64,000 bases of DNA, from positions 62,001-126,000 of the IMG/VR virus record IMGVR_UViG_3300001782_000005; one strand, given 5' to 3'. The notes beneath the pieces were generated by a model. That model made no database searches, was not told the origin of the DNA, and saw only the letters and a program-made list of their open reading frames with translations. The stretch's first letter is position 1, and each line of letters opens with the position of its first letter. Below are positions 7,108 to 22,076 of the stretch, piece by piece. A program made the translations under genes and the position numbers.

Positions 7108-7122
7108 TTTAATCCTCCTAAC

Positions 7123-7186: not shown

Positions 7187-7195
7187 CTTCCATAG

Positions 7196-7385: not shown

Positions 7386-7393
7386 GCCGTAGC

Positions 7394-7558
7394 CTATCTG
7401 TATCTTGACAGCAACTCTTCTAAATCTTCTTGTGAGAGTGCTGCCAATTTTGTGAGGGTGATACTCAAGACCTCTTTCACTTGACCTATATTCACTGATT
7501 CTTTCTTCCCCTCTACTAAAGTTATTTCTTTTGCAAATTCGTTGAGATCAATTGTCAT
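7394..7558 (-). CDS. 54-aa protein resembling the HU/IHF N-terminal helices
   Basis: Below ORF-track cutoff; GGAGGG RBS; MTIDLNEFAKEITLVEGKKESVNIGQVKEVLSITLTKL. Confidence 0.5.
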   Translation of the reverse strand: MTIDLNEFAKEITLVEGKKESVNIGQVKEVLSITLTKLAALSQEDLEELLSRYR

Positions 7559-7567
7559 AATACCCTC

Positions 7568-8353: not shown

Positions 8354-8467
8354 TAATCCGTTTCTTACCCTCGTTCACATATGTAACCTTAAATTCGATC
8401 CCTTCAATAAAAAATTTCGTACCAACTTGTGGTAATTGGGTTTTCTCTTCCTCTCTTATTGGCCGCC

Positions 8468-8845
8468 CTAGAGAGTCGGTTTGTGTATTAATTCGTTCTG
8501 TTCCCTCCATTTTGATTTTACTCCTTCACTTCTCCATTCTTCAATGTTTATATCAGCATAAGCTTCTAATGCTGCACCAGCCAACGTCATTATCTTTACA
8601 ATGTGCTCATAAGTCCTTACTGGCGCACTGCCCTGCAATTGTTGTTCTTTACAGGTCTTTAACCATGGTGGAAGGGCGGGAGTCCATTTAGTTACATATT
8701 CTTCTTTTGCTCTTTTTATATAATCATCTAGAAATTCCAGGAAACTTGCAAGGTTGAGACTAGGGTTATTTTGATATTCACCAAATGCATCCCGTTGATA
8801 GTTTCTCTCTTTTTCATAGAGTTTAGTTACTTCGTTGGTATTCAT
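8468..8845 (-). CDS. MazG-like all-alpha NTP pyrophosphohydrolase-like protein
   Basis: ERxYQ...G N-terminus and KIxxLAGAALE C-terminal helix. Confidence 0.45.
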   Translation of the reverse strand: MNTNEVTKLYEKERNYQRDAFGEYQNNPSLNLASFLEFLDDYIKRAKEEYVTKWTPALPPWLKTCKEQQLQGSAPVRTYEHIVKIMTLAGAALEAYADINIEEWRSEGVKSKWREQNELIHKPTL

Positions 8846-8864
8846 CGAGTCTCCTTAATTCGAA

Positions 8865-8942
8865 TGGTCGGGTAGGACAGATTTGAACTGCCGACCCCCT
8901 GCTCCCAAGGCAGGTGCGCTAACCAGACTACGCTACTACCCG
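8865..8942 (-). tRNA. tRNA-Pro(UGG)
   Basis: Cloverleaf; anticodon arm CCTGC-CTTGGGA-GCAGG; TTCAAAT T-loop; encoded CCA. Confidence 0.95.
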
Positions 8943-9198
8943 ACTATTGATTCAAAAGAATATTATTACAAATTTCAGAATATTTACAGTCCTCAGTACA
9001 CTCTTCTATGTTTCTCGCAAAACAATCATGAAATCCATTTTCTATTTGTTTTTTTCTTACATATTTAGTAATGCACTTGTCACATAAACCACCAGATAAT
9101 TCTTCTGATTCTTCACCTCGGACCCATCTTCTACCACACTTAATACAAACATAGGTCATTTTATCTGGCCCCTTATCCTGATAATTCAACATAGATCC

Positions 9199-9651
9199 CT
9201 ATTTATAATTTTGTTCTGCCTCTTTCTTAGGCAGTACTCTGTGGCGAAGAAGAACTTCTACGATTGCTTCACGTATTTCTTTTGTGACAGCGTCTTCAAA
9301 AAAACCAACATTCAAACCAAATTCAACCTTTAATAATTCCATAGCTATATCAATGACTTGACCCATAGTTGCCCGACCGTGTGAACCAAATCTATTCTTT
9401 ATGATATAAACGCCTCTATCTGGATCGTCAAGAGGTTTTATAATTGAAACAACTAGGTCGGCTATATATAACCATCTTGGAGGAGTTCCATGAGGGTGAT
9501 CCTCTCTTAACTGAAATGGATCTGGCAAGTCAGGTTGACTAGCTTTTTCAAAAGTCAATGCCACGTTATCATTCTCTAATATAGATTGTAAATCATCTCG
9601 ACTCATTTTATGCAAATCTCTACCCATATCAAAGATTTTCTTTTTTCCCAT
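9199..9651 (-). CDS. protein resembling a DnaB/RadA C-terminal fragment
   Basis: IADLVVSI...YIIKNRFGSHG; no Walker A. Confidence 0.45.
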   Translation of the reverse strand: MGKKKIFDMGRDLHKMSRDDLQSILENDNVALTFEKASQPDLPDPFQLREDHPHGTPPRWLYIADLVVSIIKPLDDPDRGVYIIKNRFGSHGRATMGQVIDIAMELLKVEFGLNVGFFEDAVTKEIREAIVEVLLRHRVLPKKEAEQNYK

Positions 9652-10036
9652 GTGGATTCTCCCTCATAGGTCTTATATTATGTCTCCTCATAAGTTCAAT
9701 AATAAATTCCGATAATTCCGTTTCAATCATATCATCAAATACTTCAATACCACAACCAAGGTTTGCTTTTAGCAACCTAACAAATAAAGAAACTAAATCA
9801 ACCGGGTGAACATCATCCTCGATTCTTCCATTTTTATCTTTAACAATACTAATCTGTCCATCCTTAGATATTAGCATCACATCAACAAACTCAACAGCAT
9901 CTACCATTCCATATATACTAAGTATATTCAAAAATAATTCCCTAGGAGTAAGTTCCTGTGGGATCTCTCCCTTTGAATCTCTAACCCTATGCCTTAAACT
10001 AGGAAATTCAGATAAAATACCTTCCGTCGAAACCAT
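9629..10036 (-). CDS. paralog of 9199..9651
   Basis: Similar C-termini GCGIEVFDDMIETELSEFIIELMRRHNI vs GLNVGFFEDAVTKEIREAIVEVLLRHRV. Confidence 0.45.
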   Translation of the reverse strand: MVSTEGILSEFPSLRHRVRDSKGEIPQELTPRELFLNILSIYGMVDAVEFVDVMLISKDGQISIVKDKNGRIEDDVHPVDLVSLFVRLLKANLGCGIEVFDDMIETELSEFIIELMRRHNIRPMRENPHGKKENL

Positions 10037-10859
10037 TCTCTACTCCTTTATAATTCATTGCAATTGCTTCAGATGTATGAATAGATTCTTCATGTGTACA
10101 TTTCACAATCCAATCATAAATATCTTCCCTCTTATTTAACTCATTTGAAATTGCTCTAATCGCATCCTCAACGAACATTGGATTACTTGCGGCAATCCTA
10201 GCAATTTCCTGTTCATCCACTCGTTTAATAACTGGGTAAGGTAGAGTAAGAACAGCTTTTTCAATTGTCTCAATTATATCTTCTAACCAAACGTAATTTG
10301 GTTCTATTGTCTCAATTAATACGTCAGCAAATGATCTTTGAGCATGAGGATAACCAAGTGAATCTTTGTCACCTAAATCTGAACATAACTCTGCTGAGCA
10401 TGGGCAATAAGATGAATATTGAACTCTAATACCTTGAAAAAATCTAAATTCTCCGTTATTCAATTGTCCCTCAAACTTACAATTATAATAAATAGGAAAT
10501 TCATTGTCCGATACTGGAGATTTTCTCAAAACTGGAAGTTTAAACTCAAACTTCATAAAACTAGAAGTTGACCCAATATTATCTTTTAGATTTATAAGAA
10601 TCTCATTGATTAGAAAATGTTTCAACGGTCGCCTCAAGTATGGCTTTAGCGTAAGCAGGAGTCGAGACATTGATATCCCTCTGGTATTATCCTCTAGGTC
10701 GGTTCTCATTGAGACTTTTGCAACCATCTCACGGAACCCTCCAAATTTTGATTCAAGCATGAAGGGAACTTCAACGTTCTCGACTCCCACTTGATAAATT
10801 GGTATTTTAATTGCTGGTTCTGTACATTGAATATCCGGTAACTCACAAGTTTTATCCAA
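10008..10859 (-). CDS. folE2: GTP cyclohydrolase IB (FolE2)
   Basis: LPDIQ, RGISMSR, CPCS, HAQRS, KRVDE, NPMFVED, EESIH motifs. Confidence 0.92.
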   Translation of the reverse strand: MDKTCELPDIQCTEPAIKIPIYQVGVENVEVPFMLESKFGGFREMVAKVSMRTDLEDNTRGISMSRLLLTLKPYLRRPLKHFLINEILINLKDNIGSTSSFMKFEFKLPVLRKSPVSDNEFPIYYNCKFEGQLNNGEFRFFQGIRVQYSSYCPCSAELCSDLGDKDSLGYPHAQRSFADVLIETIEPNYVWLEDIIETIEKAVLTLPYPVIKRVDEQEIARIAASNPMFVEDAIRAISNELNKREDIYDWIVKCTHEESIHTSEAIAMNYKGVENGFDGRYFI

Positions 10860-10860
10860 T

Positions 10861-11751
10861 TTACCCTCCTGCTACATAGCTGCCAATTCTTTTTCGAAGA
10901 ACTTTTGGAACTTCTTTATACTTTTTAAACTGGCCAATTACTTCATTCATGTCACTGATATATGACCAAACCCTCGGACTATGATCCATATTATAAACAA
11001 GTTCTCCGTACCTTTTCTCACCGTGAAGGAGTTTCTCTGTATCCTCTTCATCAGTTTTTCCTGACTCAAGAAGACTATTGATAAATTTTGTTTGGGTGTT
11101 AATTGTTCTCTTATGACCTTCAATTACTTGGTGTATATCAGTTAGAATACAATTCTCATATCTATCATCATACGGTTTTCCATTCTTATGATGAACCTGA
11201 GTTCCGGTACCCTTTCCGTTTCTAAATATCCAATCAAGATTATGCTTAAAATTGAAGATTAGCATAAATCTTGAAATTAATAAAGTTCCATATGGAGTCT
11301 CAGTCCCAGGAGGGAAATCTCTCCTTGTGTCAATACATTGTATTTTTCCCCCCGCAGTTCTTACTTTAAATCTACATATATCAATACAATCTGGAACTGG
11401 AGGAATTTTGCCAAGTGCACAAGTCGGACATTTGTCTGGAAACTGTATATACCAGTAGAAGAGTCCTTCTAAAATACAGTCAACATAAGGAAGGATATTA
11501 TAACTATCTTCTTTCCGAGGTTTCTTATATAGATCAAGAGGATGCTCCCAATCTAACCACACTTCTTTTGGTAATACTTTAAAACCTAAGCAAAACCGAC
11601 ACTTTTTATTACTAGGATCTACTCCTTTTCCGTCACATATATAACACTCGATAAAACCAAAAGACCTTGGTTCTGCCTGGATAAGAGGAAGATGTTTCTG
11701 TATATTAGAAGACCTTAACTTTTCCTGAGCATCTTGTAGCGCTATATTCAT
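10861..11751 (-). CDS. Zn-finger plus HNH endonuclease-like protein
   Basis: CxxCxGxG repeats; VHHKNGKPYDDRYENC HNH-like motif. Confidence 0.6.
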   Translation of the reverse strand: MNIALQDAQEKLRSSNIQKHLPLIQAEPRSFGFIECYICDGKGVDPSNKKCRFCLGFKVLPKEVWLDWEHPLDLYKKPRKEDSYNILPYVDCILEGLFYWYIQFPDKCPTCALGKIPPVPDCIDICRFKVRTAGGKIQCIDTRRDFPPGTETPYGTLLISRFMLIFNFKHNLDWIFRNGKGTGTQVHHKNGKPYDDRYENCILTDIHQVIEGHKRTINTQTKFINSLLESGKTDEEDTEKLLHGEKRYGELVYNMDHSPRVWSYISDMNEVIGQFKKYKEVPKVLRKRIGSYVAGG

Positions 11752-11954
11752 TTTTCAGTTCCCTCCCTCTTCATTGGTACCAGCCCAAGTCCTTCACATT
11801 TAGTACATCTATCAGATTCTTCCTTCAAAGAACTTCCATAACCATTACAATGGTCACATTGAGTAAATCCAAATCTTTCGGGATCAATCATTAATTTAAA
11901 TGGAGATGGTTTACTCATAACAATTTCTCCTTTCCTTTCCTTATTCTCTCCCAT
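11748..11954 (-). CDS. small DnaJ-type zinc-finger protein
   Basis: CDHCNGYG...CTKCEGLG. Confidence 0.55.
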   Translation of the reverse strand: MGENKERKGEIVMSKPSPFKLMIDPERFGFTQCDHCNGYGSSLKEESDRCTKCEGLGLVPMKREGTEK

Positions 11955-12157
11955 ATTTCTATAACGTGTAATTGCTCTCTATTTATTTCCTCACTCAACT
12001 GATGGTCAACTTCAAACGAACCATCTACATATCCATCCTGAGGAGGAAGAGCAGTTCTATCATCCTCAGCAATTTCTATTGCTTCCTCAAGGGTATTTGC
12101 ATTGATTTCTAATTCACCATAGACTTGCCATGTGCAGGCGATCTTAAAGGTAGGCAT
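11915..12157 (-). CDS. hypothetical phage protein
   Basis: GGAG RBS; I.ANTLEEA.E.A pattern seen in small phage proteins. Confidence 0.55.
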   Translation of the reverse strand: MPTFKIACTWQVYGELEINANTLEEAIEIAEDDRTALPPQDGYVDGSFEVDHQLSEEINREQLHVIEIWERIRKGKEKLL

Positions 12158-12211
12158 TTGACTCCTAAATTATTGATTTTGTTGAGTATTCTAAATTTTA
12201 AAATTTGAAAT

Positions 12212-12509
12212 AAAAGGAGGGCTCCAAATAGCAGCCGGAAGTGTTGGTTTGCCTGAGAGAAGGCAACACTTGTTGACCCGGATTTTTCATACCCTTTAAT
12301 CTTGTTGACTTGAATCTTAAGGGGCCCATGGTATTTACCCTCGGTGGGAGCCGAGTTAGTCTTGACTATCTACCTCCTCTAATAGGACCGGTAGACTGAG
12401 TCTTGAATCTTGAAAGGTCTATTTATCAGCTCCTATGCTGGTGCCTAAATAACGTTTTAGACAAACGCTCTCATACTACCTAGATTACGCCACCGAAGCC
12501 CAACTCCTT
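12212..12509 (-). ncRNA. candidate ~300-nt structured ncRNA
   Basis: Ends pair (AAGGAG/CTCCTT and GGGCTTC/GGAGCCC); internal stems CTACC/GGTAG, CTCGG/CCGAG, AAGTGTTG/CAACACTT; six CAAG motifs; U-tract after the closing stem. Confidence 0.7.
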
Positions 12510-13058
12510 TTAATCCAGTAATGGGGTTGTAGCATTAATGACCTCTAGACGTGCACTAATATTGTCGAAGAGATCATTCCAAACTCTTAGTTGTTTATTT
12601 TTCTCCTTTTCATCATACATATGCTCAACTCGTAGGGTTTCTCCAGCTGCAACATGAGCTCCTCTCATGCCCATCTGACCCAATCTAGTTTGAGCATAAT
12701 TTATATTTAGTGCTTCATAGGTTCCTGTAATGAGATTCTTCATAGATCTGTCAAGAAATAGAAGATCACTAATTGTATATTCTACTCCCTGGATCTCTAC
12801 AATTGTTTGTAAATTTGTTCTTTCAATTCTATTTTTTAACTTGAGGGCCTCCTTATGGAGATCAATATTGGATTGGATAAGCGCTTGTACCTCTTTCTTC
12901 TGAGACTTTTCATCTCCAAAAAGGGGTCGTTCATTTGAAACAATAGAGGCATATTGATTAATACTTCGAATATTGCTTTCCATCCTCTTCTGAATAACTC
13001 CTAATCTTTTTAACCCCTCAACTATCATCATTGGTCTCTCTTCTTGTTTTTCCGTCAT
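12510..13058 (-). CDS. DIP1984-like coiled-coil protein
   Basis: IVEGLKRL..IQKR...IERTNLQT...TISDLL...ISARLEVINATT pattern; likely start MMIVE. Confidence 0.6.
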   Translation of the reverse strand: MTEKQEERPMMIVEGLKRLGVIQKRMESNIRSINQYASIVSNERPLFGDEKSQKKEVQALIQSNIDLHKEALKLKNRIERTNLQTIVEIQGVEYTISDLLFLDRSMKNLITGTYEALNINYAQTRLGQMGMRGAHVAAGETLRVEHMYDEKEKNKQLRVWNDLFDNISARLEVINATTPLLD

Positions 13059-13512
13059 CCTTCCCTCCGATCTGCTTGCTTTTATATTTGGTCCCGAACT
13101 TCTCCTCCCAGTAGTCCAAACCCTTACAAATCATCCCCCACAAAAAGGTTTTATTTGTTGGTATACCATTCCTCATGAATTGGCGTTCGAGTTGCTCAAG
13201 GTATTCATCCCTAACATAGTTAACTTCACAAGTTGGACAATGAATTACTTTAACAGCTTTGAGAGTCATCGTCCCTTCAATAACAGGCACATCAATGGAC
13301 CTTCTTCGTGCTTCATGTGGTCCCCCAGGACATTGACATTTTTTAACTGTTAATTTTACCTTTTCTCCCTTCTCAAATACCTTTAAGAATGGACTTTCAC
13401 ACTCATGGTCATGAACATAAAGAGATATCTCGCCTTTTACATGGTTGATTGTTGCATCAGTAATAAATAAGTCTTCACCACAATTACATTTCACCTTATA
13501 TTCAATTTTCAT
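13018..13512 (-). CDS. zinc-ribbon protein (YgiT/MqsA-type finger)
   Basis: CNCG...HDHEC and CQC...VIHCPTCEVNY. Confidence 0.55.
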   Translation of the reverse strand: MKIEYKVKCNCGEDLFITDATINHVKGEISLYVHDHECESPFLKVFEKGEKVKLTVKKCQCPGGPHEARRRSIDVPVIEGTMTLKAVKVIHCPTCEVNYVRDEYLEQLERQFMRNGIPTNKTFLWGMICKGLDYWEEKFGTKYKSKQIGGKDDGKTRRETNDDS

Positions 13513-13524
13513 TAATTTCTCCTA

Positions 13525-14508
13525 TGATTCACTAGAGAATGCTGGATTACTTTTTTTGCCTTGGTTCACTTTTTATAATAGGTTTCTAGGCTACAGAGGT
13601 TCACTAATTGGGGTTGGTTTTAGTAACACCCCCGGTTCACTATATATTGCTGGTTTTTTGGTTGTGTGTGCTGGTTCACTCTACATCTGTGGACTTCTAT
13701 CTGCAGTTGGTTCACTACTACCACACGGTTTTCTTAATTTTGTTGGTTCACTTGGCACTGTAGGTTAACTGCGGTCGTCTGGTTCACTTTGGTCGTATGG
13801 TCTCCTGGGACATCACGGTTCACTAATTTATACTGGATTCTTCTATGTCATGGTTCACTGTTTTACAATGGGTTCCTTTCATCGAAAGGTTCACTAATCA
13901 GTGGTGATTAATTTTCGTGCCTCAGGTCCACTATTATCATCTGGTTTTCTCACCCCGACGTGGTTCACTTTCGTTTTTTGAATACTGATGTCTTCTGGTT
14001 CACTACCTTAACCTGGTTTTCTTTGGGCCCCTTTGGTTCACTTATACTACTGGTTTACTATACTACATTGGTTCACTCCACTCAGGTGGTTTACTGCAGG
14101 CATGTGGTTCACTCCTCAACATCGAATCCTTAGTCTATACTGGTTCACTTTGCCCGTCAGAATTTTTACATCGAGTTGGTTCACTGCGTTGCGATGGGTT
14201 ACTCCACCAATCTGGTTCACTTAAGAGTAGTGGTTTCTAATCAGTAGTGGTTCACTCTCTATTGTTGAGTTTTTTAACATATTCTGGTACACTCGTTTAA
14301 ACTGATTTCTTTGCCTTCCTGGTTCACTATTGGGTCCTGAGTATTTTTGCGTCTGGTTCACTTCCTCCGCCTAGGGTTAGTGGATAGCATTGGTTCACTC
14401 GGCATCGTTGGAATAATCTAAGATACTGGTTCACTAAAACTGACTGGTTTTTCTTTTCAAAGTTGGTTCACTCCCGATATTTGGTTTACTGTTATGGGCT
14501 GGTCCACT
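13525..14508 (-). repeat. TIGR-type tandem interspaced guide RNA array: 27 units of ~36 nt with two repeats and two ~9-nt spacers per unit
   Basis: GGTTCACT (3 variant forms) at 28 positions from 13526 to 14501, spacing 34-39 nt (mean ~36). On the minus strand: edge AGTGAACCA, degenerate loop repeat ~AGWAAACCA, unique spacers. Confidence 0.88.
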
Positions 14509-14766
14509 CATAATGTTGAGCAATCTTTCTGCATTTTCCAGATTTGACATACTTTTTATATTTTCATAATCCTTCTCAACTTGCTCTAGTAAATTTCTCA
14601 AGATCTTCATAAGCATAGGTCTTGTAACTGGATGTGGATGTTCCATATGATTATGAACTAATTTTCCTTCGCCATTTATTGCTACAATAATATTTATAAC
14701 TTTTACTGTATGTGCATTGTTTAGATTATCACGAAAAATATCTATATGAGGCTCTTTCTCTATCAT
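14434..14766 (-). CDS. hypothetical 110-aa protein whose 3' end reads into the array
   Basis: Start moved to MIEKE (AAGGA RBS) because the upstream part of the ORF is tRNA-His. Confidence 0.5.
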   Translation of the reverse strand: MIEKEPHIDIFRDNLNNAHTVKVINIIVAINGEGKLVHNHMEHPHPVTRPMLMKILRNLLEQVEKDYENIKSMSNLENAERLLNIMSGPAHNSKPNIGSEPTLKRKTSQF

Positions 14767-14779
14767 TGACTTCCTTTTC

Positions 14780-14859
14780 TGGGGTGTCGGGTGGGAATCG
14801 AACCCACGCTCAACAGGGGCCACAACCCTGCGCCCTTATCCAATTCGGGCCACCGACAC
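14780..14859 (-). tRNA. tRNA-His(GUG)
   Basis: Acceptor GTGTCGG/CCGACAC, C73, CCA; anticodon arm CAGGG-TTGTGGC-CCCTG. Confidence 0.93.
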
Positions 14860-15378
14860 TTATTCTACTGCATTCTTCCAGTCCGAAACTAGCTTCTTAT
14901 GATTCAATATATCTATCTCACATTTCGGGCAGTTTACACCATGTTCATCCAAACTTCTTAAGACATCTTCTAGTGCTTTATTTCTGTTCCTCAATTTCCG
15001 AAAAGCTGCCATAGGATTTGCTACTGGACAATCTTCCTCATGCCCATAAGAATCACACCTTTCAAGACACTCCATGTCTTCACTAGTATCCGTCAGATAC
15101 TGTTTAAGAATATCCAATTCTTTCTTCAATTTACTCATTGGATGTTTTGGGCATATCTCAATATGTTGTTTTAAAACTTCTGCCATAGAAACAGGTACTT
15201 CATCCTTCGGCCCATACCTATGACCACAATATACACAATTAACATACATTCCAGACTGAAGATCGTTTATCCATTGTTGTATCTGACTAACTTCATTTTT
15301 CCAGTCTCTAAGGATATCATAAACCATATCCCCAGAAGTTCCCCTTTCGGCTAATTTATACCACTCTTCAATATTCAT
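14860..15378 (-). CDS. zinc-binding hypothetical protein
   Basis: CVYCG...HIEICPKHP and CPKC motifs; start moved to MNIEEW behind GAGG. Confidence 0.6.
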   Translation of the reverse strand: MNIEEWYKLAERGTSGDMVYDILRDWKNEVSQIQQWINDLQSGMYVNCVYCGHRYGPKDEVPVSMAEVLKQHIEICPKHPMSKLKKELDILKQYLTDTSEDMECLERCDSYGHEEDCPVANPMAAFRKLRNRNKALEDVLRSLDEHGVNCPKCEIDILNHKKLVSDWKNAVE

Positions 15379-15398
15379 AATATCCTCTCTTATAGGGA

Positions 15399-15529
15399 CC
15401 TTGCCTAGCTTGTCAGCAACCTGCCGGTTCATCCGTTTTATCTCTCGGTCAGTGGGGGGTACCAATTCCCACCTAGCAGGATACTCCTTCCCCAGACTTT
15501 TTCACTGGCCTCTAACAAGCATGGCAAGG
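15399..15529 (-). ncRNA. candidate rod-like structured RNA
   Basis: CCTTGCC/GGCAAGG and GCTTGTTAG/CTGACAAGC closing helices; internal CCTGC/GCAGG, GTGGG/CCCAC, CCAG/CTGG. Confidence 0.55.
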
Positions 15530-15536
15530 AGGCGCC

Positions 15537-15749
15537 TCAGTTAAAAATTAAATCTAAAATGTCTTCAGCTGCTTTATTTCGAGTATCATAATCAGTTATT
15601 CCATACCGATCATGAAGAAGCATCGCAACATTGCTAACGTATGCAATTTTAAGACCCTCATCTTTTTTAAGAGCATCTCTTATTGTCTTTCTTGCTTCTG
15701 CTATTTTATTCACATATTTCTCCTTAGAAAAATTGGCCGGGAGTTGCAT
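15537..15749 (-). CDS. hypothetical protein
   Basis: Likely true start is the GTG of (V)NKIAEARK after AAGGAG. Confidence 0.55.
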   Translation of the reverse strand: MQLPANFSKEKYVNKIAEARKTIRDALKKDEGLKIAYVSNVAMLLHDRYGITDYDTRNKAAEDILDLIFN

Positions 15750-15793
15750 TACCCAGACAGAGCTCCCGGACGTGCTGGGTCACGCCTGGCCAA
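15733..15793 (-). ncRNA. three-way-junction RNA with kissing loops (candidate leader or ncRNA)
   Basis: P1 TTGGCC/GGCCAA, P2 GGCGTG/CACGTC with loop ACCCAG, P3 CGGGAG/CTCCCG with loop containing CTGGGT. Confidence 0.55.
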
Positions 15794-15797
15794 GATG

Positions 15798-15920
15798 TTA
15801 GCAATATGGACAATACCACTGAGGACTGAACCTCTTACAGCGATCACAATATGTATAATGGCCCGTAAGTGAAAGTTCTAATTTCCTAAGTAGTCTGCCC
15901 AACCAACTTAGTTCATGCAT
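15798..15920 (-). CDS. 40-aa zinc-ribbon microprotein
   Basis: MHELSWLGRLLRKLELSLTGHYTYCDRCKRFSPQWYCPYC; start overlaps HNH stop. Confidence 0.45.
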   Translation of the reverse strand: MHELSWLGRLLRKLELSLTGHYTYCDRCKRFSPQWYCPYC

Positions 15921-16449
15921 CGCTTTCCATTTTCGAGCACTCACGCCATATCTCCTTAAGTAAGTCATGAATTCCATATTCCTTCATTCTTAACGTAAGA
16001 AATTCAGAAATAGTTGGTTGATATGGTTGCTTCTTTGGATATATATTTGCCTCTCTTGGAGATCTGTCCCCCTTCTTGTTATTACAGTCTTTACAAGAAG
16101 TTAGACAGTTATCAAAATTGTTTTGACCTCCACGAGATTTTGGGATCATGTGATCTATTGTTAAATTTCCTCTGTCTGTGCTACCGCAGTATTGACAAGT
16201 CCAATTATCCCTAATCAACACATTCTTTGGTCTAAAAGGGACTTTGTTCTTGTAAATCGAGCGAACCAATTTTAGCAGTCGCAGAATCAGAGGAAGAGTA
16301 ATAACAATAGTTCGCCCAACGTTGGCAATTTGGCGGTCACCGTACTTCAAAACTTCTACTTTGTTTTGAATCATTAGGCATACCGCCCTTCGCCAACGAA
16401 GAGTACACAAGTAAGTGTAGTCGGCGTTAAGCAGCAGCACACGTTCCAT
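15913..16449 (-). CDS. HNH endonuclease (McrA-like)
   Basis: VLLLNADY N-terminus; RDNWTCQYCG...TIDHMIPKSRGG...CKDCNNKKG. Confidence 0.92.
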   Translation of the reverse strand: MERVLLLNADYTYLCTLRWRRAVCLMIQNKVEVLKYGDRQIANVGRTIVITLPLILRLLKLVRSIYKNKVPFRPKNVLIRDNWTCQYCGSTDRGNLTIDHMIPKSRGGQNNFDNCLTSCKDCNNKKGDRSPREANIYPKKQPYQPTISEFLTLRMKEYGIHDLLKEIWRECSKMESDA

Positions 16450-16661
16450 AACCCTTACCTCCTTTAGGTATAACTAATGGTTTCACAAATTGGACATTGA
16501 TATACTAACCTCGGTCTCTCTTCTGTTCCAACCCATCTTCTAATTTTCCACATCTTTATTAAACAACTAGAACAGAAGCTTAATTTTACTTCTTTCTTTA
16601 ATATCGTCCAAAAGAATTTAATTCTTACTCTTAAAAATGAAGGTATCATTTTGTCATCCTT

Positions 16662-16736
16662 TGGACACTACGCCTGGATTCGAACCAGGGATCACGGATT
16701 TGCAATCCGTTGCCTTAACCTCTTGGCCACGTAGTG
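16662..16736 (-). tRNA. tRNA-Cys(GCA)
   Basis: Acceptor CACTACG/CGTAGTG, U73, CCA; ACGGA-TTGCAAA-TCCGT. Confidence 0.95.
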
Positions 16737-16740
16737 TATT

Positions 16741-16817
16741 TGGCACGCACGGAGGGACTCGAACCCCCAACCGCAGGTTTTGGAGACCTGTGCTCTTCGC
16801 AATTGAGCTACGTGCGC
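16741..16817 (-). tRNA. tRNA-Trp(CCA)
   Basis: CAGGT-CTCCAAA-ACCTG; TTCGAGT T-loop; CCA end. Confidence 0.93.
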
Positions 16818-16818
16818 A

Positions 16819-17412
16819 CTAAATGTGTGGCATTAGCCTTGCATAGATAAGACCACAAGTTTCAAGGCTAATAATTGCAGTTGTCACATATTCACATGCC
16901 ATTTTTGCTTTTCTGAGATCATCAAAATTGGAATAATTAAAACGACCTGCACACTCAAGTTTAAGTTGAGGTATTCTGTTTAATCCAGAATTGAACAAAC
17001 TAGCGATAAGTCTCTCTCCACACTCAGGACATATCCTCATCGCAAAACATTTATTAAAATAACCCATCTGCTCCCACTTATTTTCAATATTTGTTCTAAC
17101 GTTTTTGTGAACTTTATACTTTTGGAGATTATTCATAGGTCTAGGGCTAGATTTGTAGCTTTCTTTCCATCTTCTGAAGTAAATTTTTACTTCGAATTTA
17201 CAGATTTCTGGTTTTCCACATCTCAAAATAATATGTGCCCACTTCACTTTTTTATTACTAGTATAAGAGAAATCGCTTGACTGTTGTATGCCACTTATTT
17301 TTAAATCCCAACCACAGAAAGGGCAAATAAACACATTGATTGCTCTATGAGAATATGGTTTTGATTTCCATTTATCTTCAACCTTTGTTATTGGAATGAA
17401 TGGATTCGGCAT
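16819..17412 (-). CDS. double zinc-ribbon protein
   Basis: CPFCG and CPECG; the second domain is paralogous to 18783..19076 (WEqM.f.eKC.A.R.CPECGERL). Confidence 0.55.
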   Translation of the reverse strand: MPNPFIPITKVEDKWKSKPYSHRAINVFICPFCGWDLKISGIQQSSDFSYTSNKKVKWAHIILRCGKPEICKFEVKIYFRRWKESYKSSPRPMNNLQKYKVHKNVRTNIENKWEQMGYFNKCFAMRICPECGERLIASLFNSGLNRIPQLKLECAGRFNYSNFDDLRKAKMACEYVTTAIISLETCGLIYARLMPHI

Positions 17413-17631
17413 CTTCTTCCTCAGCTACTCTAAATCCAGTTAGGTCAGCAACTCCGACTACCCCTTTCATTTTTTTAGCAAGATCACTAGGTCCCTTTTC
17501 ACAATCATGGGGTCTGTATATGAAGTTATAACTGGATAAATACATCAGTACAGATTCAAGTGGTTCATTTGTCTCAATTACGTCAGGAAAATTAGCCTGA
17601 CAAAATCTACAACGATAAAAGCAATGTAATT

Positions 17632-17910
17632 TCATCTTATCTTCAACTCCTTTGTTACCGTATTCTGTGTAACCGCAAAAGCACAACTATTTGGATCTAC
17701 ATCAGGTCTATTAAGATAATCTAGAATTTTGTGGGTTGCCTTATCGGCACACTCGGTACTACAAATGGAAAGTATAAGACATCCGAAGCACGGATCATCG
17801 AGATTCTCTATATCAACTTTTTCTAAATCTTCTTTGCCAAGTTTGAAGTATCGTTGAAGCAACCCTTCTGTTATGGTTCGGATACTTTTTAAACGCTTGT
17901 TTATTCTCAT
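17632..17910 (-). CDS. small Cx2Cx5Cx3C protein
   Basis: DPCFGCLILSICSTEC. Confidence 0.5.
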   Translation of the reverse strand: MRINKRLKSIRTITEGLLQRYFKLGKEDLEKVDIENLDDPCFGCLILSICSTECADKATHKILDYLNRPDVDPNSCAFAVTQNTVTKELKIR

Positions 17911-18220
17911 TTAAAATTTCCTCTAGTGCGACAGCAACTCCTGCACTTCGACTAATTCCAGCTTCACAATTAACAACTATTTCTTCGGGTTGAGTTAATC
18001 TAAGAAAGTTCAGAATTGATACTGCATGCCATTCATTAATTAGTTTATCACTTTTATCTCTTGCTTCATCGAGATCATGAAAGTGTAACTTGAGTGACCT
18101 CCATGCTTCAGAAACATTGGGATGTTTTCTGCCGGGGTCTGTTATGGAGATTAAGATTGATTTATTTGAAGGAATTAACCTCTCTACTTGCCTCCTTGAA
18201 TAAATATTAATCTTTACCAT
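17813..18220 (-). CDS. protein-tyrosine/dual-specificity phosphatase-like protein
   Basis: CX5R P-loop VNCEAGISRSAGVA; ISITDP and FHD motifs. Confidence 0.85.
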   Translation of the reverse strand: MVKINIYSRRQVERLIPSNKSILISITDPGRKHPNVSEAWRSLKLHFHDLDEARDKSDKLINEWHAVSILNFLRLTQPEEIVVNCEAGISRSAGVAVALEEILNENKQAFKKYPNHNRRVASTILQTWQRRFRKS

Positions 18221-18238
18221 TTTATTCCTTTAAATTGA

Positions 18239-18347
18239 TGCGGGGTGAGGCGGGAGTCGAACCCGCACGGTCAGTTATGACCACGTGGAGAAATAATATC
18301 ACCCACGCATGTCTGCCCACTAGTATTAAAGTTCCATCACTCACCCC
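18239..18347 (-). ncRNA. aberrant class II tRNA-like RNA
   Basis: 8-bp GGGGTGAG/CTCACCCC acceptor, perfect T-arm GCGGG-TTCGACT-CCCGC, variable arm GGTCA/TGACC, enlarged D and anticodon loops, no CCA. Confidence 0.65.
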
Positions 18348-18782
18348 ATTCCCCCCTAAGAGCTTGTTTTACCTTAGCCTTTGCATTATTCAGTCTAAAC
18401 TTAACAAGATCATAACCTTCAAATAAATTTAACCTTTCTGCTTTATCCATTAACTTTTCAATCAGATCTAAAATCCTAATTAAATCTTCTTGTGCAGATT
18501 CAACAGATGCTATACCCAAGCACCATTTTCTTTCAATCTTCACAACTTCATCAACAATTTCTTTCATCTCCTTAGAGAATCTTCGTAATTTCATCTCATC
18601 AAAATTCACAACTTGATTCATTATTCTCCTCCGTTAGATAACTCAAAGCTACTTCTGCATTACAGTGAAGACACCCTGCTTCGCCAGTTTCAGTATTTGC
18701 AAAACATTCTTCAAAGTCAATAACATCCATCAACACATCTCTGATTTTTTTGATTTTTTCTCCTGATATACAGCACATTTCT

Positions 18783-19076
18783 TTATCTCTTAAAAAAAGA
18801 GGTTTTCTTTAAAGGGTGTAATGTTGGAGGGATAGTCATTGATGTAGTTACTTTTGCCCATTTCTGATAAACCTCCCTATTGTCGTCACTTATTTCAACA
18901 TGAAGCATATAGTGACATTTTTTACTAGAACAAGACAATCTTAGTGAAGGTTGTTGAAAAACCAGAAGTCGCTCACCACACTCAGGACATTTCCTTATAG
19001 CCATACATTTCTCAATAAAACTCATATCTTCCCACTGCTTCTCTAAATCTGATGCAATTTCTAAACCCGTCTTCAT
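18783..19076 (-). CDS. zinc-ribbon protein
   Basis: CPECGERL...CSSKKCHY. Confidence 0.55.
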   Translation of the reverse strand: MKTGLEIASDLEKQWEDMSFIEKCMAIRKCPECGERLLVFQQPSLRLSCSSKKCHYMLHVEISDDNREVYQKWAKVTTSMTIPPTLHPLKKTSFFKR

Positions 19077-19079
19077 ATC

Positions 19080-22076
19080 TCACTCCTTCAATACTCCAAT
19101 AACATTAAAATATGCATCAAGCAGTTTCACAGATTCTGAAACATCATCTTCCTCATCTTTCGGTTTAATAAATTCCGATTCAATTGTTTCGTTGATATAT
19201 CTATTCTTTAAATCTATACAATCTGATTTTGTTGTTAAAAATTCAGAAAGGTTAATTGGTCCATCGTGAGCAATTAAACATGCTGTCTCCATTTCCCCAC
19301 ATCTCTGACCACCACGATGCTTCCTTCCTCCTAAAGGTTGCAGAGTTTTCTTTGCATATGATCCAATACCTCTAGCGGCTAATCTTGTCTCAGCAATATG
19401 CACCATCTTAAAGAAATAGATATAACCAGCGGCAACTTTATTTAGAAGCTTCTCTTTTGAGATTGGATCATAGATATCGTATTCAAACGAAGTTCCAGTT
19501 TTCTCCATTGCCTCTTTTACCATTTCCATTGAAACAGATTCAAATGGAGGTTGAATTAGTGATAGCCCTGCAATAAAATCTTTACTAATCACCTTTGGCA
19601 GTTGTTCTTCGAATTGCTTGTAATACCAATTCCCTTCTGTATTATCAATCACTTTTATATAGTGAAGTAAACTTTTCCTAACTTGTTTTTGACTACCCTC
19701 ATCAATCAAGTCAAAAAGTTTCTTCCTTAAATCAATAAAAGACATTGATAGGTGTAACTCAAATAATTGACCAATATTCATCCTAGAGATTATCCCAAGC
19801 GGATTTATACAAATATCAACATTCCTACCATCTGGAAGTTGAGGCATTTTCTCATGTGGAACTATCCTTGAAATAACTCCTTTATTCCCATGCCTATTTG
19901 CAATTTTATCTCCAGCCTCTATTGGTCGATAATAAATTCCGAACATCTCAACTCTTACACCGTTAACTGGTTCCCCCTTAACTTTATACCTACCAATATG
20001 AGAGAATTTGCTCAAATTTCGATCTCGAATAAATTGTTTAGCTTGCTCGACCGAAAGATGTTCATGTAAGACTTTCTGAAAATCTTTTTCCTTCTTTTGT
20101 TGTTTCTCGATCTTTTCTTCAATCCATTTCTTATACTCAGGTATTTCTTTATTCCACACATTTGCATAGACATTTGCATCAGTAATCCAAACTCTCTTTC
20201 TAGTGGTGAGTGGTGTCTCTTCTTCAAAAATTGAATAGAAGTCTAATCCTGCCGTAACTTCTTTCATTTTTGCATAAGGTTTTCCGGGAGCTATCGACTC
20301 CATTACATTAGGTAGTGGTTTATATACATTCTCGGTTAAACTTAGAAGTACTTTATTAGGCGGAATTGTAAACGATAAATCTCTATAATGGACAGATGTA
20401 AATACATCTTCTTTAACTAATCTATCAGATATAACTATTCCGTCCTCATAATTATAACCATAATAGGTCATAACTGCAGTTAATAAGTTTCGACCAAAAT
20501 TTATCTTACCATCTGTACAGAATCCGCTCTCAGCTAATATATCTCCTGCTTTAAATTTATCTCCAACTTTTACATAGATATTCATACCATCCATATTCTC
20601 AACATATATTTTCCTAAGGCCAATATCAAAGACATCAGCTTCATTATCATCATATTTAACAATCAAGAATTCTTGATTCAAAAATACTACTTCACCATCC
20701 TTTTTTGCTCTTCTAACAAATTGAGTAAAATCTGTATATAATCCCTCACATCCAGATTGAATTGTGGGAATATCAAATTCCCTGAGCATTATTGATTGTC
20801 TCATCTGAGATGCAGACATTTGTAATCTAGTCTGATCATTATGCTCGAGAAAAGGAACCATCGAAACTGGAATTGAAATGATTTGTTTATCCAAAATTTC
20901 TTCAGAAAACCGTAAATTATTATCTAATTTTACATTTGGAATCAAATTTTGAATAACTCCACAATTATCCCTGTCTGGAGTATCCACTGGACAAATCCTA
21001 CCAAACATACTTGGACAAATATCTCTCAAATGCTCAGGAACGTTCTCACGATTAAAACCACCTGGCCCAATTAAACTTATTCTTGATAAACGAGTCAATT
21101 CCTCAATCGGATTTATTGCAAAATCAAATTGAACAATATCCGACACATTACACTCTGAGAGGATTTGAGAAGAATTGATATTAAACTTTGGTTGCCTTGC
21201 TGTTCTATTCGACATACATAAATCAAAGACAGCTTTAGAAACTTTTGCTAAAATCATATATTCAGCACATCTAACTCTCTTATTTCTAAAATCAGTATCA
21301 TCATATACTACTCCAGCAATCGCATTGAATAATTCTTCTATTAGGGATCCAGTTGTGAAATATTCAGCAGACATTACATCAGCCTTAAGTATTAGATCAA
21401 GAGCATATACAAGATCCTCACCCTTTGATTTTGCGTTATAGTGTGAATAGTGTGCTCCGACCTCTCTTATAAAATCATCTTGTGTCCAACCAGCTGAATT
21501 TTCATAATAGAGTTTTAAATCCAGCATTAACTTATCATATATAGTATTACCACTTACTTCTAGAGCAGATAGTTTGAATCTTTGATTCAATTCATCCATT
21601 CCATAGTAAGCAAACATTATTAAAGCAAATGGAACTTTCTTCCCAAGAATACTCAACTTTACATGAGGTTGTTCTCTATCGTCAAAGACCATTATTGAGG
21701 CAACATTCGTCCTCAATTTGATTGATTTTCCTCTAGTAACAATAGGAATATCAAAGAGTTGAAATTGTGGAATCTTTTTCCTGCCTTTAATCATTATATA
21801 GTTTCGATCAATAAGTTTTGGTATTGCCATACTCAAGTCTATCTCAGAGTTTCCTTTCTGTAATTTAATAACCATGCTCTGCTTTAAGGTTTTGAATAAC
21901 TCACCTGAAGTAAATTTTGAGTCTTTAATTATAAAATCAGTTACTGTAAATCCCAGTTCTTCGGCAGGTTTTAAGATTTGCCTTACTTTCTCGGTTAATG
22001 AAGAGTATTCTCTCTCTCTGATAGAGAAAATATTACTCTCCTCATTAACCTTAAAATACGGATTGAGTATGTTCAA
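19080..22076 (-). CDS. rpoB: DNA-directed RNA polymerase beta-like subunit (set 1)
   Basis: GRICPVDTPD, PFLEHND..R.QM.ASQMRQ, GYNYEDG, GDKIANRHGNKG, SRMN.GQ, QP..G....GGQRCGEME. Confidence 0.95.
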   Translation of the reverse strand: MNILNPYFKVNEESNIFSIREREYSSLTEKVRQILKPAEELGFTVTDFIIKDSKFTSGELFKTLKQSMVIKLQKGNSEIDLSMAIPKLIDRNYIMIKGRKKIPQFQLFDIPIVTRGKSIKLRTNVASIMVFDDREQPHVKLSILGKKVPFALIMFAYYGMDELNQRFKLSALEVSGNTIYDKLMLDLKLYYENSAGWTQDDFIREVGAHYSHYNAKSKGEDLVYALDLILKADVMSAEYFTTGSLIEELFNAIAGVVYDDTDFRNKRVRCAEYMILAKVSKAVFDLCMSNRTARQPKFNINSSQILSECNVSDIVQFDFAINPIEELTRLSRISLIGPGGFNRENVPEHLRDICPSMFGRICPVDTPDRDNCGVIQNLIPNVKLDNNLRFSEEILDKQIISIPVSMVPFLEHNDQTRLQMSASQMRQSIMLREFDIPTIQSGCEGLYTDFTQFVRRAKKDGEVVFLNQEFLIVKYDDNEADVFDIGLRKIYVENMDGMNIYVKVGDKFKAGDILAESGFCTDGKINFGRNLLTAVMTYYGYNYEDGIVISDRLVKEDVFTSVHYRDLSFTIPPNKVLLSLTENVYKPLPNVMESIAPGKPYAKMKEVTAGLDFYSIFEEETPLTTRKRVWITDANVYANVWNKEIPEYKKWIEEKIEKQQKKEKDFQKVLHEHLSVEQAKQFIRDRNLSKFSHIGRYKVKGEPVNGVRVEMFGIYYRPIEAGDKIANRHGNKGVISRIVPHEKMPQLPDGRNVDICINPLGIISRMNIGQLFELHLSMSFIDLRKKLFDLIDEGSQKQVRKSLLHYIKVIDNTEGNWYYKQFEEQLPKVISKDFIAGLSLIQPPFESVSMEMVKEAMEKTGTSFEYDIYDPISKEKLLNKVAAGYIYFFKMVHIAETRLAARGIGSYAKKTLQPLGGRKHRGGQRCGEMETACLIAHDGPINLSEFLTTKSDCIDLKNRYINETIESEFIKPKDEEDDVSESVKLLDAYFNVIGVLKE

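What the first reader, a model, noticed from the sequence alone, without database searches (positions are those of the whole stretch)
13525..14508. TIGR-type dual-spacer guide-RNA array (27 x ~36 nt)
Seen: GGTTCACT recurs at 13563, 13598, 13634, 13673, 13709, 13745, 13781, 13817 and on to 14428, 14465, with variants at 13526, 13925, 14286 and 14501 (28 copies, spacing 34-39). Midway between copies is a second, looser repeat (TGGTTTTCT, TGGTTTACT, TGGATTCT...). The two repeats are separated by unique ~9-nt segments, e.g. GGTTCACT-actaccaca-CGGTTTTCT-taattttgt-T. On the transcribed (minus) strand this reads AGTGAACCA-N9-AGWAAACCA-N9. Established: alternating edge and loop repeats with two 9-nt spacers in 36-nt units define TIGR arrays, which are processed to 36-nt tigRNAs that guide Nop-domain Tas proteins to both DNA strands. 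Inference: the virus carries a 27-guide RNA-guided targeting repertoire. It is not CRISPR (repeats and spacers are far too short).
Basis: partly seen in the sequence, partly recalled or inferred. Interest (0 to 1): 0.95.

Follow-up and report, generated by a model that had tools for sequence, protein, structure and literature searches.

The report
Remote TIGR guide-RNA array in jumbo phage
This 983-base stretch of an uncultured jumbo phage is a real TIGR array of 27 dual-spacer guide RNAs; its partner Tas protein lies about 135 kb away in the same genome, beside a second and larger array.

Summary
GGTTCACT occurs 24 times exactly, plus 4 one-mismatch variants, at 13526-14508 with 34-39 nt spacing; chance predicts 1.4 copies in the whole window. 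On the minus strand each unit reads AGUGAACCA, 9 nt, a looser A-G-(A/U-rich)-CCA repeat, 9 nt.

The TIGR interpretation is supported, with one correction: the 64-kb window contains no tas gene. The window is identical to parts of two IMG/VR jumbo-phage contigs of 224 and 277 kb. Both contigs encode a 387-aa Tas protein 133-143 kb from this array. That protein scores above the NCBIfam TIGR-Tas cut-off, and its predicted fold matches the solved TasH and TasR structures best. It sits directly behind a second array of about 40 units with the same edge repeat.

The protein has no recognisable nuclease domain, so it is TasA-like. Binding or repression is therefore more likely than cutting.

Three related phages keep an array at the same syntenic site, but with 15-43 units and mostly different guides. 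All six reading frames of the array are closed.

No target was found above chance.

Verdict: a new member of a known kind. The notable features are that it is a remote array without an adjacent tas gene, and that the phage carries about 68 guides.

The parts
13526..14508 (-). Dual-repeat TIGR array: 28 edge-repeat copies bounding 27 units of 34-39 nt. Each unit is edge AGUGAACCA, spacer A (9 nt), loop repeat A-G-(A/U-rich)-CCA (7-12 nt), spacer B (9 nt).
   Evidence: All six frames are closed, with 10-35 stops each.
14500..14508 (-). First edge repeat of the array, variant AGUGGACCA. It is full length, not 5'-truncated, and lies inside the 3' end of the upstream ORF.
13525..13533 (-). Last edge repeat, variant AGUGAAUCA. 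It is followed directly by UAGGAGAAAUUA and the ATG of the next ORF. No terminator-like site is present.
   Evidence: The array beside tas ends the same way: edge repeat, AGGAG, then the ATG of tas.
14437..14769 (-). ORF of 111 aa with no family match. It starts 11 nt after tRNA-His, and its last ~24 codons run into the first two array units. The array is probably transcribed by read-through from here (inference).
   Evidence: Homologues of 46-56% identity in L005, L008 and L037 also end inside the first units of their arrays.
13018..13512 (-). ORF of 164 aa with only weak zinc-ribbon hits. It starts 13 nt after the last edge repeat and keeps this position in the related phages.
14780..14859 (-). 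tRNA-His (GUG), upstream neighbour on the same strand.

Best explanation
The region is a dual-repeat TIGR array that serves, in trans, a Tas protein encoded elsewhere in the same jumbo-phage genome.

Shown here:
- the array architecture;
- its membership in a large family of viral arrays that lie next to tas genes;
- a Tas gene in the same genome, beside a second array with the same edge repeat.

Inferred mechanism:
1. The array is transcribed leftward on the minus strand, probably as part of the transcript that runs from tRNA-His and the 111-aa ORF into the 164-aa ORF.
2. Dimers of the 387-aa Tas protein bind the CCA (box C) and AG (box D) ends of the edge and loop repeats.
3. The precursor is cut inside each edge repeat into guides of about 36 nt.
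4. In each guide, spacer A pairs with one DNA strand and spacer B with the other strand of an adjacent 9-bp half-site. One strand of the target therefore reads as spacer A followed by the reverse complement of spacer B.
5. This Tas has no nuclease domain, so the likely outcome is sequence-specific DNA binding that blocks transcription or replication, as published for TasA. Cleavage is unlikely.

What the 27 guides bind is unknown.
For: Architecture.

Family. A scan of IMG/VR for three AGTGAACC copies at 25-31 nt gaps gave at least 120 loci. In 58 of them a ~293-aa protein cluster is present. That cluster is Tas: NF052498 gives 171 bits for L085, and the cluster profile hits PDB TasH at 7e-48 and TasR at 1e-41. 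In all 87 arrays that share a locus with tas, the AGTGAACC strand is the tas strand, and the median gap is 39 bp.

Same genome. The window equals L067 and L079 with 0 mismatches. Those contigs also hold L121/L123, with tas at L121:10001-11164. That protein scores 116.5 bits against a cut-off of 100 and covers the whole profile. The AlphaFold model has pLDDT 80, and its ten best Foldseek hits are all TasH or TasR at probability 1.00. An array with 42 edge copies ends at the tas ribosome-binding site.

Box motifs. Both repeats start with AG and end with CCA. This fits the published rule that the motifs may diverge but covary between edge and loop (PMC12045711).

Guide-like evolution. L005, L008 and L037 keep the order ORF111-array-ORF164, with flanking proteins 46-77% identical, but carry 37, 15 and 43 units and share only a few recognisable guides with the window. 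Some window guides have relatives in the array beside tas in phage L124.

No nuclease. TasA acting as a repressor: bioRxiv 10.64898/2026.09.09.750476.
Against: - No tas gene lies within the 64-kb window, whereas published arrays flank tas.
- No RNA data exist, so neither transcription nor processing is shown.
- The histidine that SpTasH uses to process its precursor (H296) aligns with Ile383 in this Tas. A histidine follows two residues later (H385), and the tyrosine is conserved (Y376). Self-processing is therefore uncertain.
- There is no terminator at the 3' end of the array.
- No target was found above chance in the window plus 1.2 Mb of related loci. The same holds for two guides scanned against IMG/VR and for one guide scanned against 185,579 genomes (25 scattered hits).
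- The loop repeat is loose: G at its second position in only 15 of 27 units.
Confidence: 0.9

Rival explanations
1. The array is an inactive relic: a copy of the array beside tas that was moved to a distant site and is no longer expressed or used.
For: There is no adjacent tas gene, no terminator and no recognisable promoter. The loop repeat is loose.
Against: - The edge repeat is better kept here (24 of 28 exact) than in the array beside tas (29 of 42 exact).
- Three related phages keep an array at the same syntenic site although their flanking proteins have diverged to 46-77% identity. Those arrays have gained and lost units, which decay alone would not produce.
- None of its guides duplicates a guide of the array beside tas in the same genome.
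- Arrays far from tas recur on at least three other phage contigs.
Confidence: 0.06
2. The repeats are binding sites in DNA, such as iterons or a centromere-like array for a replication or partition protein, rather than a transcribed guide array.
For: The region is a regular array of a short motif with a spacing of about 3.4 helical turns. A weak ParB-N-like hit lies about 11 kb away (ORF 1144-2547, E 6e-4, below the Pfam cut-off).
Against: - The same repeat lies within tens of bases of tas, always on the tas strand, in 87 of 87 cases. Strand would not matter for a duplex binding site.
- The two-repeat, two-spacer layout and the CCA/AG ends match the published tigRNA anatomy.
Confidence: 0.02
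3. The region encodes a protein made of 12-residue repeats (S-E-P-x-x-x-S-K-P-x-x-x in the minus-strand frame that starts at the edge repeat).
For: - Units average 36 nt, which is 12 codons.
- The upstream ORF reads through the first two units in that frame.
- Among close relatives, related guides differ mostly at spacer positions 3, 6 and 9 (31 of 54 differences).
Against: - All six frames carry 10-35 stop codons across the 983 nt, and the longest open run on the sense strand is 49 codons.
- Unit lengths of 34, 35, 37, 38 and 39 nt break any frame.
- In-phase stop codons in the spacers are as frequent as out-of-phase ones, 5-7% in each phase.
- Arrays in the relatives are closed in the same way.
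Confidence: 0.01
4. The region is a CRISPR array.
For: It has repeats alternating with unique spacers.
Against: The repeats are 7-12 nt and the spacers 9 nt, there are two different alternating repeats, and no cas gene was found among the scanned neighbours.
Confidence: 0

Closest known systems
Dual-repeat TIGR-TasA systems (Faure et al. 2025, PMC12045711; for example the Flavonifractor plautii FpTIGR locus)
   Same: - Alternating edge and loop repeats of about 9 nt, two 9-nt spacers and units of about 36 nt.
- CCA at the 3' end of both repeats.
- An effector that is a Nop-domain protein without a nuclease domain.
- Viral origin.
   Different: - The array is 133-143 kb from tas instead of flanking it.
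- The genome holds two arrays with about 68 guides in all, against the 'most often 5 to 15' units reported.
- Box D is AG rather than UG in both repeats.
- The loop repeat varies in length (7-12 nt).
- There is no terminator at the 3' end.
SpTasH of Salicola phage CGphi29 (PDB 9W03, 9W04, 21KL; PMC13421893)
   Same: It is the best structural and profile match of the phage's Tas. Both are phage-encoded and use dual-repeat arrays. The tyrosine of the C-terminal processing loop is conserved (Y289 in SpTasH, Y376 here).
   Different: SpTasH carries an HNH nuclease and cuts DNA, and its spacers total 16 nt. Here there is no HNH, and the catalytic H296 position is Ile, with a His two residues later.
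TaTasR of a Thermoproteota archaeon (PDB 9MTY)
   Same: The Nop and coiled-coil core (profile E 1e-41). The edge repeat UGCGAGCCA and loop repeat UGAAACCCA have the same 9-nt layout as AGUGAACCA and AGUAAACCA here. The target reads as spacer A followed by the reverse complement of spacer B.
   Different: TasR has an N-terminal RuvC domain, which this protein lacks.
Ralstonia jumbo phage phiRSL1 ORF034, annotated 'transposase' (NC_010811.2, 13180-14217)
   Same: It is the closest homologue in a cultured phage (30.7% identity over 90% of the protein). That phage is also a jumbo phage, of 231 kb. A dual-repeat array whose repeats begin with AG and end with CC fills the unannotated 1.4 kb downstream of the gene.
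   Different: The repeat sequences differ (AGUCACCC and AGUGUGCC types), and the array lies next to the gene.
Box C/D guide RNAs with Nop5, and IS110 bridge RNAs
   Same: [quoted passage not shown] Weaker Foldseek hits go to IS621, ISCro4 and Sulfolobus Nop5.
   Different: Those systems guide RNA methylation or DNA recombination, and their guide RNAs are not arranged in long regular arrays of 36-nt units.

Membership tests
TIGR array (dual-repeat type) | Two distinct alternating repeats of 8-12 nt, separated by spacers of about 9 nt, in units of about 36 nt repeated in tandem | tested here: met
   There are 27 units of 34-39 nt. The edge repeat is 9 nt, the loop repeat 7-12 nt, and both spacers are 9 nt.
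TIGR array (dual-repeat type) | Both repeats end with box C (CCA) and start with box D (UG, or a variant that covaries between edge and loop) | tested here: met
   Edge repeat: CC in 27 of 27 units and the final A in 22 of 27. Loop repeat: C 19/27, C 26/27, A 21/27. Both repeats start with AG (edge 27/27; loop A 25/27 and G 15/27). Box D is thus a variant shared by the two repeats, as the published rule allows.
TIGR array (dual-repeat type) | Array located directly upstream or downstream of a tas gene | tested here: not met
   A Tas profile search of all six-frame ORFs of the window gave no hit at E <= 1. The nearest tas gene is 133-143 kb away on the same contigs.
TIGR array (dual-repeat type) | A Tas (Nop-domain) protein encoded in the same genome, with a matching repeat | tested here: met
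   L121:10001-11164 scores 116.5 bits against NF052498, cut-off 100. The 42-copy AGTGAACC array ends at its start codon. The window and L121 lie on the same IMG/VR contigs, and the window matches L067 and L079 with 0 mismatches.
TIGR array (dual-repeat type) | Repeat strand is the strand of tas (the transcribed strand) | tested here: met
   87 of 87 arrays that share a locus with tas are co-oriented with it. In the window this is the minus strand, which is also the strand of all neighbouring genes.
TIGR array (dual-repeat type) | Transcript processed into tigRNAs of about 36 nt, cut inside the edge repeat | not testable with these tools
   No RNA data are available. As an indirect point, the Tas C-terminal loop keeps the tyrosine (Y376), but the histidine is shifted by two residues.
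TIGR array (dual-repeat type) | Spacers vary between related genomes while the repeats stay constant | tested here: met
   The syntenic arrays in L005, L008 and L037 have 37, 15 and 43 units. Only about 4-8 units in each are recognisably related to window units.
TIGR array (dual-repeat type) | Spacer pairs match DNA targets, read as spacer A followed by the reverse complement of spacer B | tested here: inconclusive
   No hit with 1 mismatch or fewer in the window plus 1.2 Mb of loci, and 2-mismatch hits are no more frequent than in control arrangements. Public scans for two guides gave scattered hits at chance level.
TIGR array (dual-repeat type) | Array ends with a truncated edge repeat followed by an intrinsic terminator | tested here: not met
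   The last edge copy is full length with one mismatch. It is followed by a ribosome-binding site and an ATG, and no terminator-like site was found.
Tas protein family (tested on the L121 protein, which lies outside the window) | Nop-type RNA-binding fold with a coiled-coil, related to TasR and TasH | tested here: met
   NF052498 is matched over the full profile. Foldseek probability is 1.00 against ten TasH or TasR chains, with TM-score up to 0.68 on the target.
TasH or TasR (nuclease-bearing Tas) | N-terminal HNH or RuvC domain | tested here: not met
   Only 37 residues precede the Nop profile. Pfam gives nothing except the IS110-type Transposase_20 helix-hairpin region. The model shows helices plus one four-strand insertion.
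CRISPR array | One repeat of about 23-47 nt, spacers of similar length, and usually cas genes | tested here: not met
   There are two repeats of 7-12 nt and spacers of 9 nt. No cas gene was found among the scanned neighbours.

The most novel reading that the evidence does not exclude
Jumbo phages of this lineage may run one Tas protein from several arrays dispersed across the genome. Under this reading the remote array is a fully active second guide bank that exchanges units with the array beside tas. Such banks would be missed by catalogues that look only around tas genes. A second, weaker lead is that related guides in this lineage differ mainly at every third spacer position, in the same way in spacers A and B. 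This could reflect a rule of how this TasA reads its guides, or of how spacers arise, and such a rule is not known for TasR or TasH.
Probability: 0.45. Interest if true: 0.6.

Novelty: new member of a known kind. Interest (0 to 1): 0.5.

Why it matters
TIGR-Tas systems were described in 2025, and their natural targets and biological role are still unknown. This locus shows three things.

- A TIGR array can sit more than 130 kb from its tas gene. Surveys anchored on tas genes therefore undercount guides. The held literature has no paper that mentions orphan TIGR arrays, or TIGR arrays together with jumbo phages.
- A single phage can carry about 68 different guides for a Tas protein that lacks a nuclease.
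- The set of four to five related phages, whose arrays are partly shared and have undergone turnover, is useful material for asking how TIGR arrays gain and lose units and what they bind.

Tried and rejected
- **Tas among the neighbours.** Pfam, PHROGs and NCBIfam gave no hit for the neighbouring ORFs. The 201-aa ORF gave no PDB sequence hit; the 178-aa ORF matched only HNH domains. That 178-aa ORF (15913-16449) is a stand-alone enzyme of the IscB/Cas9 HNH type, conserved in the relatives. I found nothing that links it to the array beyond proximity.
- **Known phages.** Megablast of 11 kb around the array against 50,697 phage records found nothing.
- **Target search.** I tried both possible half-site orders, with a gap of 0 or 1, against the window plus 1.2 Mb of loci. 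Nothing exceeded the controls. After fixing the order from the published tigRNA1 and its target, I scanned IMG/VR for guide 18 (3 hits) and for a degenerate form of guide 12 (44 scattered hits). I then scanned the genome collection for guide 18 (25 hits in unrelated taxa). All of this is consistent with chance.
- **Coding repeat.** Rejected on stop-codon counts.
- **Period-three variation among related guides.** It is present in the window's lineage (31 of 54 differences) but not in other lineages (12 of 53). It was noticed after the fact, so I report it as unexplained.
- **Palindromic targets.** Spacer A resembles spacer B slightly more often than in shuffled pairs (5.5% against 3.0% at 6 or more matches). 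The shuffle mixes arrays of different base composition, so I draw no conclusion.
- **Published catalogue.** Neither the contigs nor the Tas peptides appear in the stored part of Table S1 of Faure et al. That file was cut when stored, so this says little.
- **tRNA upstream of the array beside tas.** No tRNA and no Rfam family was found there, despite a stretch that resembles a tRNA 3' end.
- **False positives in the pattern scan.** Five of the 120 pattern loci (L010, L049, L063, L080, L083) are coding repeats, not TIGR arrays. They were excluded from the guide statistics.

Full report
**1. The observation**

The region was read directly. GGTTCACT occurs 24 times exactly on the + strand between 13563 and 14472. 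It occurs once elsewhere in the window, on the other strand. Shuffles that keep dinucleotide content give a mean of 1.41 copies and at most 5.

Four one-mismatch copies lie at 13526, 13925, 14286 and 14501. They complete a chain of 28 copies with spacings of 34-39 nt.

Read on the minus strand, each of the 27 units has four parts:
- AGUGAACCA, with AGUG, A6 and CC invariant;
- nine variable bases;
- a second, looser repeat that starts with A (25/27) then G (15/27), is A/U-rich, and ends in C (19/27), C (26/27), A (21/27);
- nine more variable bases.

If both spacers are taken as 9 nt, all variation in unit length falls in the loop repeat, which is 7-12 nt long.

**2. Not coding, not CRISPR**

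Across the 983 nt, each of the six frames has 10-35 stop codons. The longest open run on the sense strand is 49 codons. Unit lengths that are not multiples of three break any frame. In a set of 1,068 distinct units from this array family, stop codons in phase with the repeat are as common as out-of-phase ones, at 5-7%. The repeat and spacer sizes are far outside those of CRISPR.

**3. Surroundings in the window**

All neighbouring genes are on the minus strand.
- Upstream lie tRNA-His (14780-14859) and a 111-aa ORF (14437-14769) whose last ~24 codons run into the first two units.
- Downstream, the last edge copy is followed after 13 nt by the ATG of a 164-aa ORF, with an AGGAG in between.
- There is no terminator-like site.

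None of the neighbouring ORFs matches a Tas, Nop or IS110 family. A Tas profile finds nothing in any six-frame ORF of the window at E <= 1.

The 178-aa ORF at 15913-16449 is a stand-alone HNH enzyme of the IscB/Cas9 HNH type.

The window is from a jumbo phage. It encodes two sets of multisubunit RNA polymerase beta and beta' genes, a type II topoisomerase, an SbcC-like ATPase, a helicase and a ligase.

**4. Relatives of the array**

Clustering the ORFs of these loci gave one real family present in 58 of them, with a median length of 293 aa. This family is Tas:
- NCBIfam NF052498 ('TIGR-Tas system RNA-guided endonuclease') gives 171 bits for the L085 member.
- A profile of 42 members hits the solved TasH at E 7e-48, TasR (9MTY) at 1e-41, and IS621/ISCro4 at about 1e-10.

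Of 167 arrays detected in these loci, 87 share the locus with tas. All 87 have the AGTGAACC strand on the tas strand, and the median gap is 39 bp. This fixes the transcribed strand of the window array as the minus strand.

Five loci turned out to be coding repeats and were set aside.

**5. The same phage encodes Tas, far away**

L067 (IMGVR_UViG_3300001782_000005, 277 kb) equals window 6065-19911 with 0 mismatches. L079 (IMGVR_UViG_3300027893_000003, 224 kb) equals window 13363-23789 with 0 mismatches.

Both contigs carry a second array and a tas gene (L121, L123). These loci differ from each other by one base in 21 kb. A third contig, IMGVR_UViG_3300027888_000004 (L122), also carries this tas locus.

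The window array lies at 31.1-32.1 kb and tas at about 165.4 kb in the 224-kb contig. In the 277-kb contig the window array lies at 75.5-76.5 kb and the array beside tas at about 219.5-220.8 kb. The separation is therefore 133-143 kb, and the two arrays have the same orientation.

The array beside tas has 42 edge copies (29 exact). It ends with an edge repeat, AGGAG and the ATG of tas.

The 387-aa Tas protein:
- scores 116.5 bits against the curated cut-off of 100, over the whole profile;
- gives an AlphaFold model with mean pLDDT 80.2 and pTM 0.75;
- has TasH or TasR chains as its ten best Foldseek hits in the PDB, all at probability 1.00, followed by IS621/ISCro4 and archaeal Nop5.

Only 37 residues precede the Nop profile. 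No HNH or RuvC domain is detected. It is therefore a TasA-type protein.

In the C-terminal loop, the tyrosine that SpTasH uses to cut its precursor (Y289; PMC13421893) aligns with Y376. The catalytic H296 aligns with Ile383, and a histidine follows at 385. Most family members have histidine at both positions.

**6. Match to the published anatomy**

Faure et al. [quoted passage not shown] The repeats are 8-12 nt and the spacers about 9 nt. Both repeats start with box D (UG) and end with box C (CCA). These motifs may diverge, but they then covary between edge and loop.

Here both repeats end with CCA and both start with AG, so box D is a covarying variant.

The published synthetic TaTasR tigRNA1 is AGCCA-UGCAAGCCC-UGAAACCCA-UUGCCUUAG-UGCG. 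Its target oligonucleotide contains TGCAAGCCC followed by CTAAGGCAA (Table S3).

Two features differ from the published description. The array is not next to tas, and it lacks a terminal terminator.

**7. Evolution**

Three related phage contigs (L005, L008, L037) keep the gene order HNH, ORF111, array, ORF164, ORF182 ... FolE2. Their flanking proteins are 45-92% identical to those of the window.

Their arrays have 37, 15 and 43 units. Only a handful of units in each are recognisably related to window units, and these sit at different ranks in the array.

Two window guides, units 4 and 12, have close relatives in the array beside tas in another relative, L124. Units therefore move between the two arrays, or descend from a common pool.

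Within the window's own genome the two arrays share no guide. The repertoire is thus about 27 plus about 40 guides.

Arrays tens of kilobases from tas also occur on at least three other phage contigs.

The closest cultured relative of this Tas is ORF034 of Ralstonia jumbo phage phiRSL1, annotated as a transposase (30.7% identity). A dual-repeat array fills the unannotated 1.4 kb downstream of it.

**8. Targets**

No site matching spacer A followed by the reverse complement of spacer B, with 1 mismatch or fewer, exists in the window or in 1.2 Mb of fetched loci. Two-mismatch hits are no more frequent than for control arrangements.

Public scans gave the following:

| Guide | Collection | Hits |
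|---|---|---|
| 18 (most conserved) | IMG/VR | 3 |
| 18 | 185,579 genomes | 25, in unrelated taxa |
| 12 (degenerate form) | IMG/VR | 44, scattered |

All of this is what chance predicts.

The spacers have 43.8% G+C, against 36.1% for the window. No set among 2,000 random sets of 54 nine-mers from the window reached that value. This weakly suggests that the guides are not drawn from this part of the phage's own genome.

**9. Mechanism and confidence**

That this is a TIGR array serving the phage's Tas protein is well supported (0.9).

Several further steps are inferences from published work on other Tas proteins (PMC12045711; PMC13421893; bioRxiv 10.64898/2026.09.09.750476). They are:
- that the array is transcribed by read-through from the upstream ORF;
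- that it is processed inside the edge repeats;
- that it guides DNA binding without cleavage.

I put DNA binding or repression as the outcome at roughly 0.55. The targets are unknown.

**10. Novelty**

TIGR arrays are a known kind, and the 2026 preprint catalogues 6,685 of them around tas loci. This one is a new member. Its distinctive features are:
- its distance from tas;
- the size of the phage's total repertoire;
- the AG box D;
- the shifted processing histidine.

The held literature has no paper that mentions orphan TIGR arrays, or TIGR arrays together with jumbo phages. That is absence from this library only.

Noticed in passing
window 13526-14508 compared with L005:4099-5444, L008:4348-4893, L037:2571-4126, L121:8462-9990 and L124:7674-9987: Among 22 families of related guides in the window's phage lineage, 31 of 54 variable positions fall at spacer positions 3, 6 and 9, in both spacer A and spacer B. 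In 18 families from other lineages the figure is 12 of 53. The array is not translated, and a contiguous opposite-strand target in a gene would not give the same phase in both spacers. The pattern was noticed after the fact and remains unexplained.
   Followed up: partly
window 13526-14508 (spacers only): The 54 spacers have 43.8% G+C, against 36.1% for the window. None of 2,000 random sets of 54 nine-mers from the window reached this value. The guides may therefore be aimed at DNA richer in G+C than this part of the phage genome.
   Followed up: partly
window 15913-16449 (-): A stand-alone 178-aa HNH endonuclease whose HNH domain is closest to those of IscB and Cas9 (NCBIfam guided_IscB, 53.9 bits, below cut-off). 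It is 84-87% identical in the three related phages, which makes it one of the best-kept genes near the array. No link to the array was shown.
   Followed up: partly
window 19080-25010 and 51878-59317 (-): Two separate sets of multisubunit RNA polymerase beta-like and beta'-like genes, as in phiKZ-type and phiR1-37-type jumbo phages. Sigma-70 promoter scans are therefore of little use for this genome.
   Followed up: no
window 10008-10859 (-): A FolE2-type GTP cyclohydrolase I (Pfam 212 bits), 90-92% identical in the related phages. It may belong to a 7-deazaguanine or folate-related pathway. The adjacent 296-aa ORF has only a faint HNH_3 hit.
   Followed up: no
window 1144-2547 (-): A 467-aa ORF with a weak ParB N-terminal domain hit (E 6e-4, 20 bits, below the cut-off of 26). 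Some published TasA loci are paired with a ParB-like gene. This ORF is 11 kb from the array, and the hit is too weak to build on.
   Followed up: no
window 50799-50851 (-): Rfam match to the DUF3800-VI RNA motif (44.1 bits, gathering score 35).
   Followed up: no
window 8865-8942, 14780-14859, 16662-16736 and 16741-16817 (-): Four tRNA genes (Pro-UGG, His-GUG, Cys-GCA, Trp-CCA) lie in the same leftward gene block as the array.
   Followed up: no
L197 (Ralstonia phage phiRSL1, NC_010811.2 9249-18187): 3932-4969 and 4970-6390: ORF034, annotated 'transposase', is a Tas homologue. The unannotated 1.4 kb after it is a dual-repeat array with AGUCACCC-type and AGUGUGCC-type repeats. The small ORFs 031-033 upstream, where the AGUCACCC repeat motif also occurs once, may be spurious calls.
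   Followed up: partly
L121:8380-8445: Just upstream of the array beside tas lie a 25-nt stretch that resembles the T-arm and acceptor 3' end of a tRNA, then a 15-bp hairpin with a T run. Neither ARAGORN nor Rfam calls a tRNA there.
   Followed up: yes
L121:12344-13798 (-): The T4 gp23-type major capsid gene lies 1.2 kb from tas. Its best match among cultured phages is Yersinia jumbo phage phiR1-37, at only 25.7% identity. The phage therefore belongs to a lineage with no close cultured relative.
   Followed up: partly
L010, L049, L063, L080, L083: These loci matched the three-copy AGTGAACC pattern but are protein-coding tandem repeats with in-frame, highly similar units. A pattern scan of this kind therefore gives some false positives.
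   Followed up: partly
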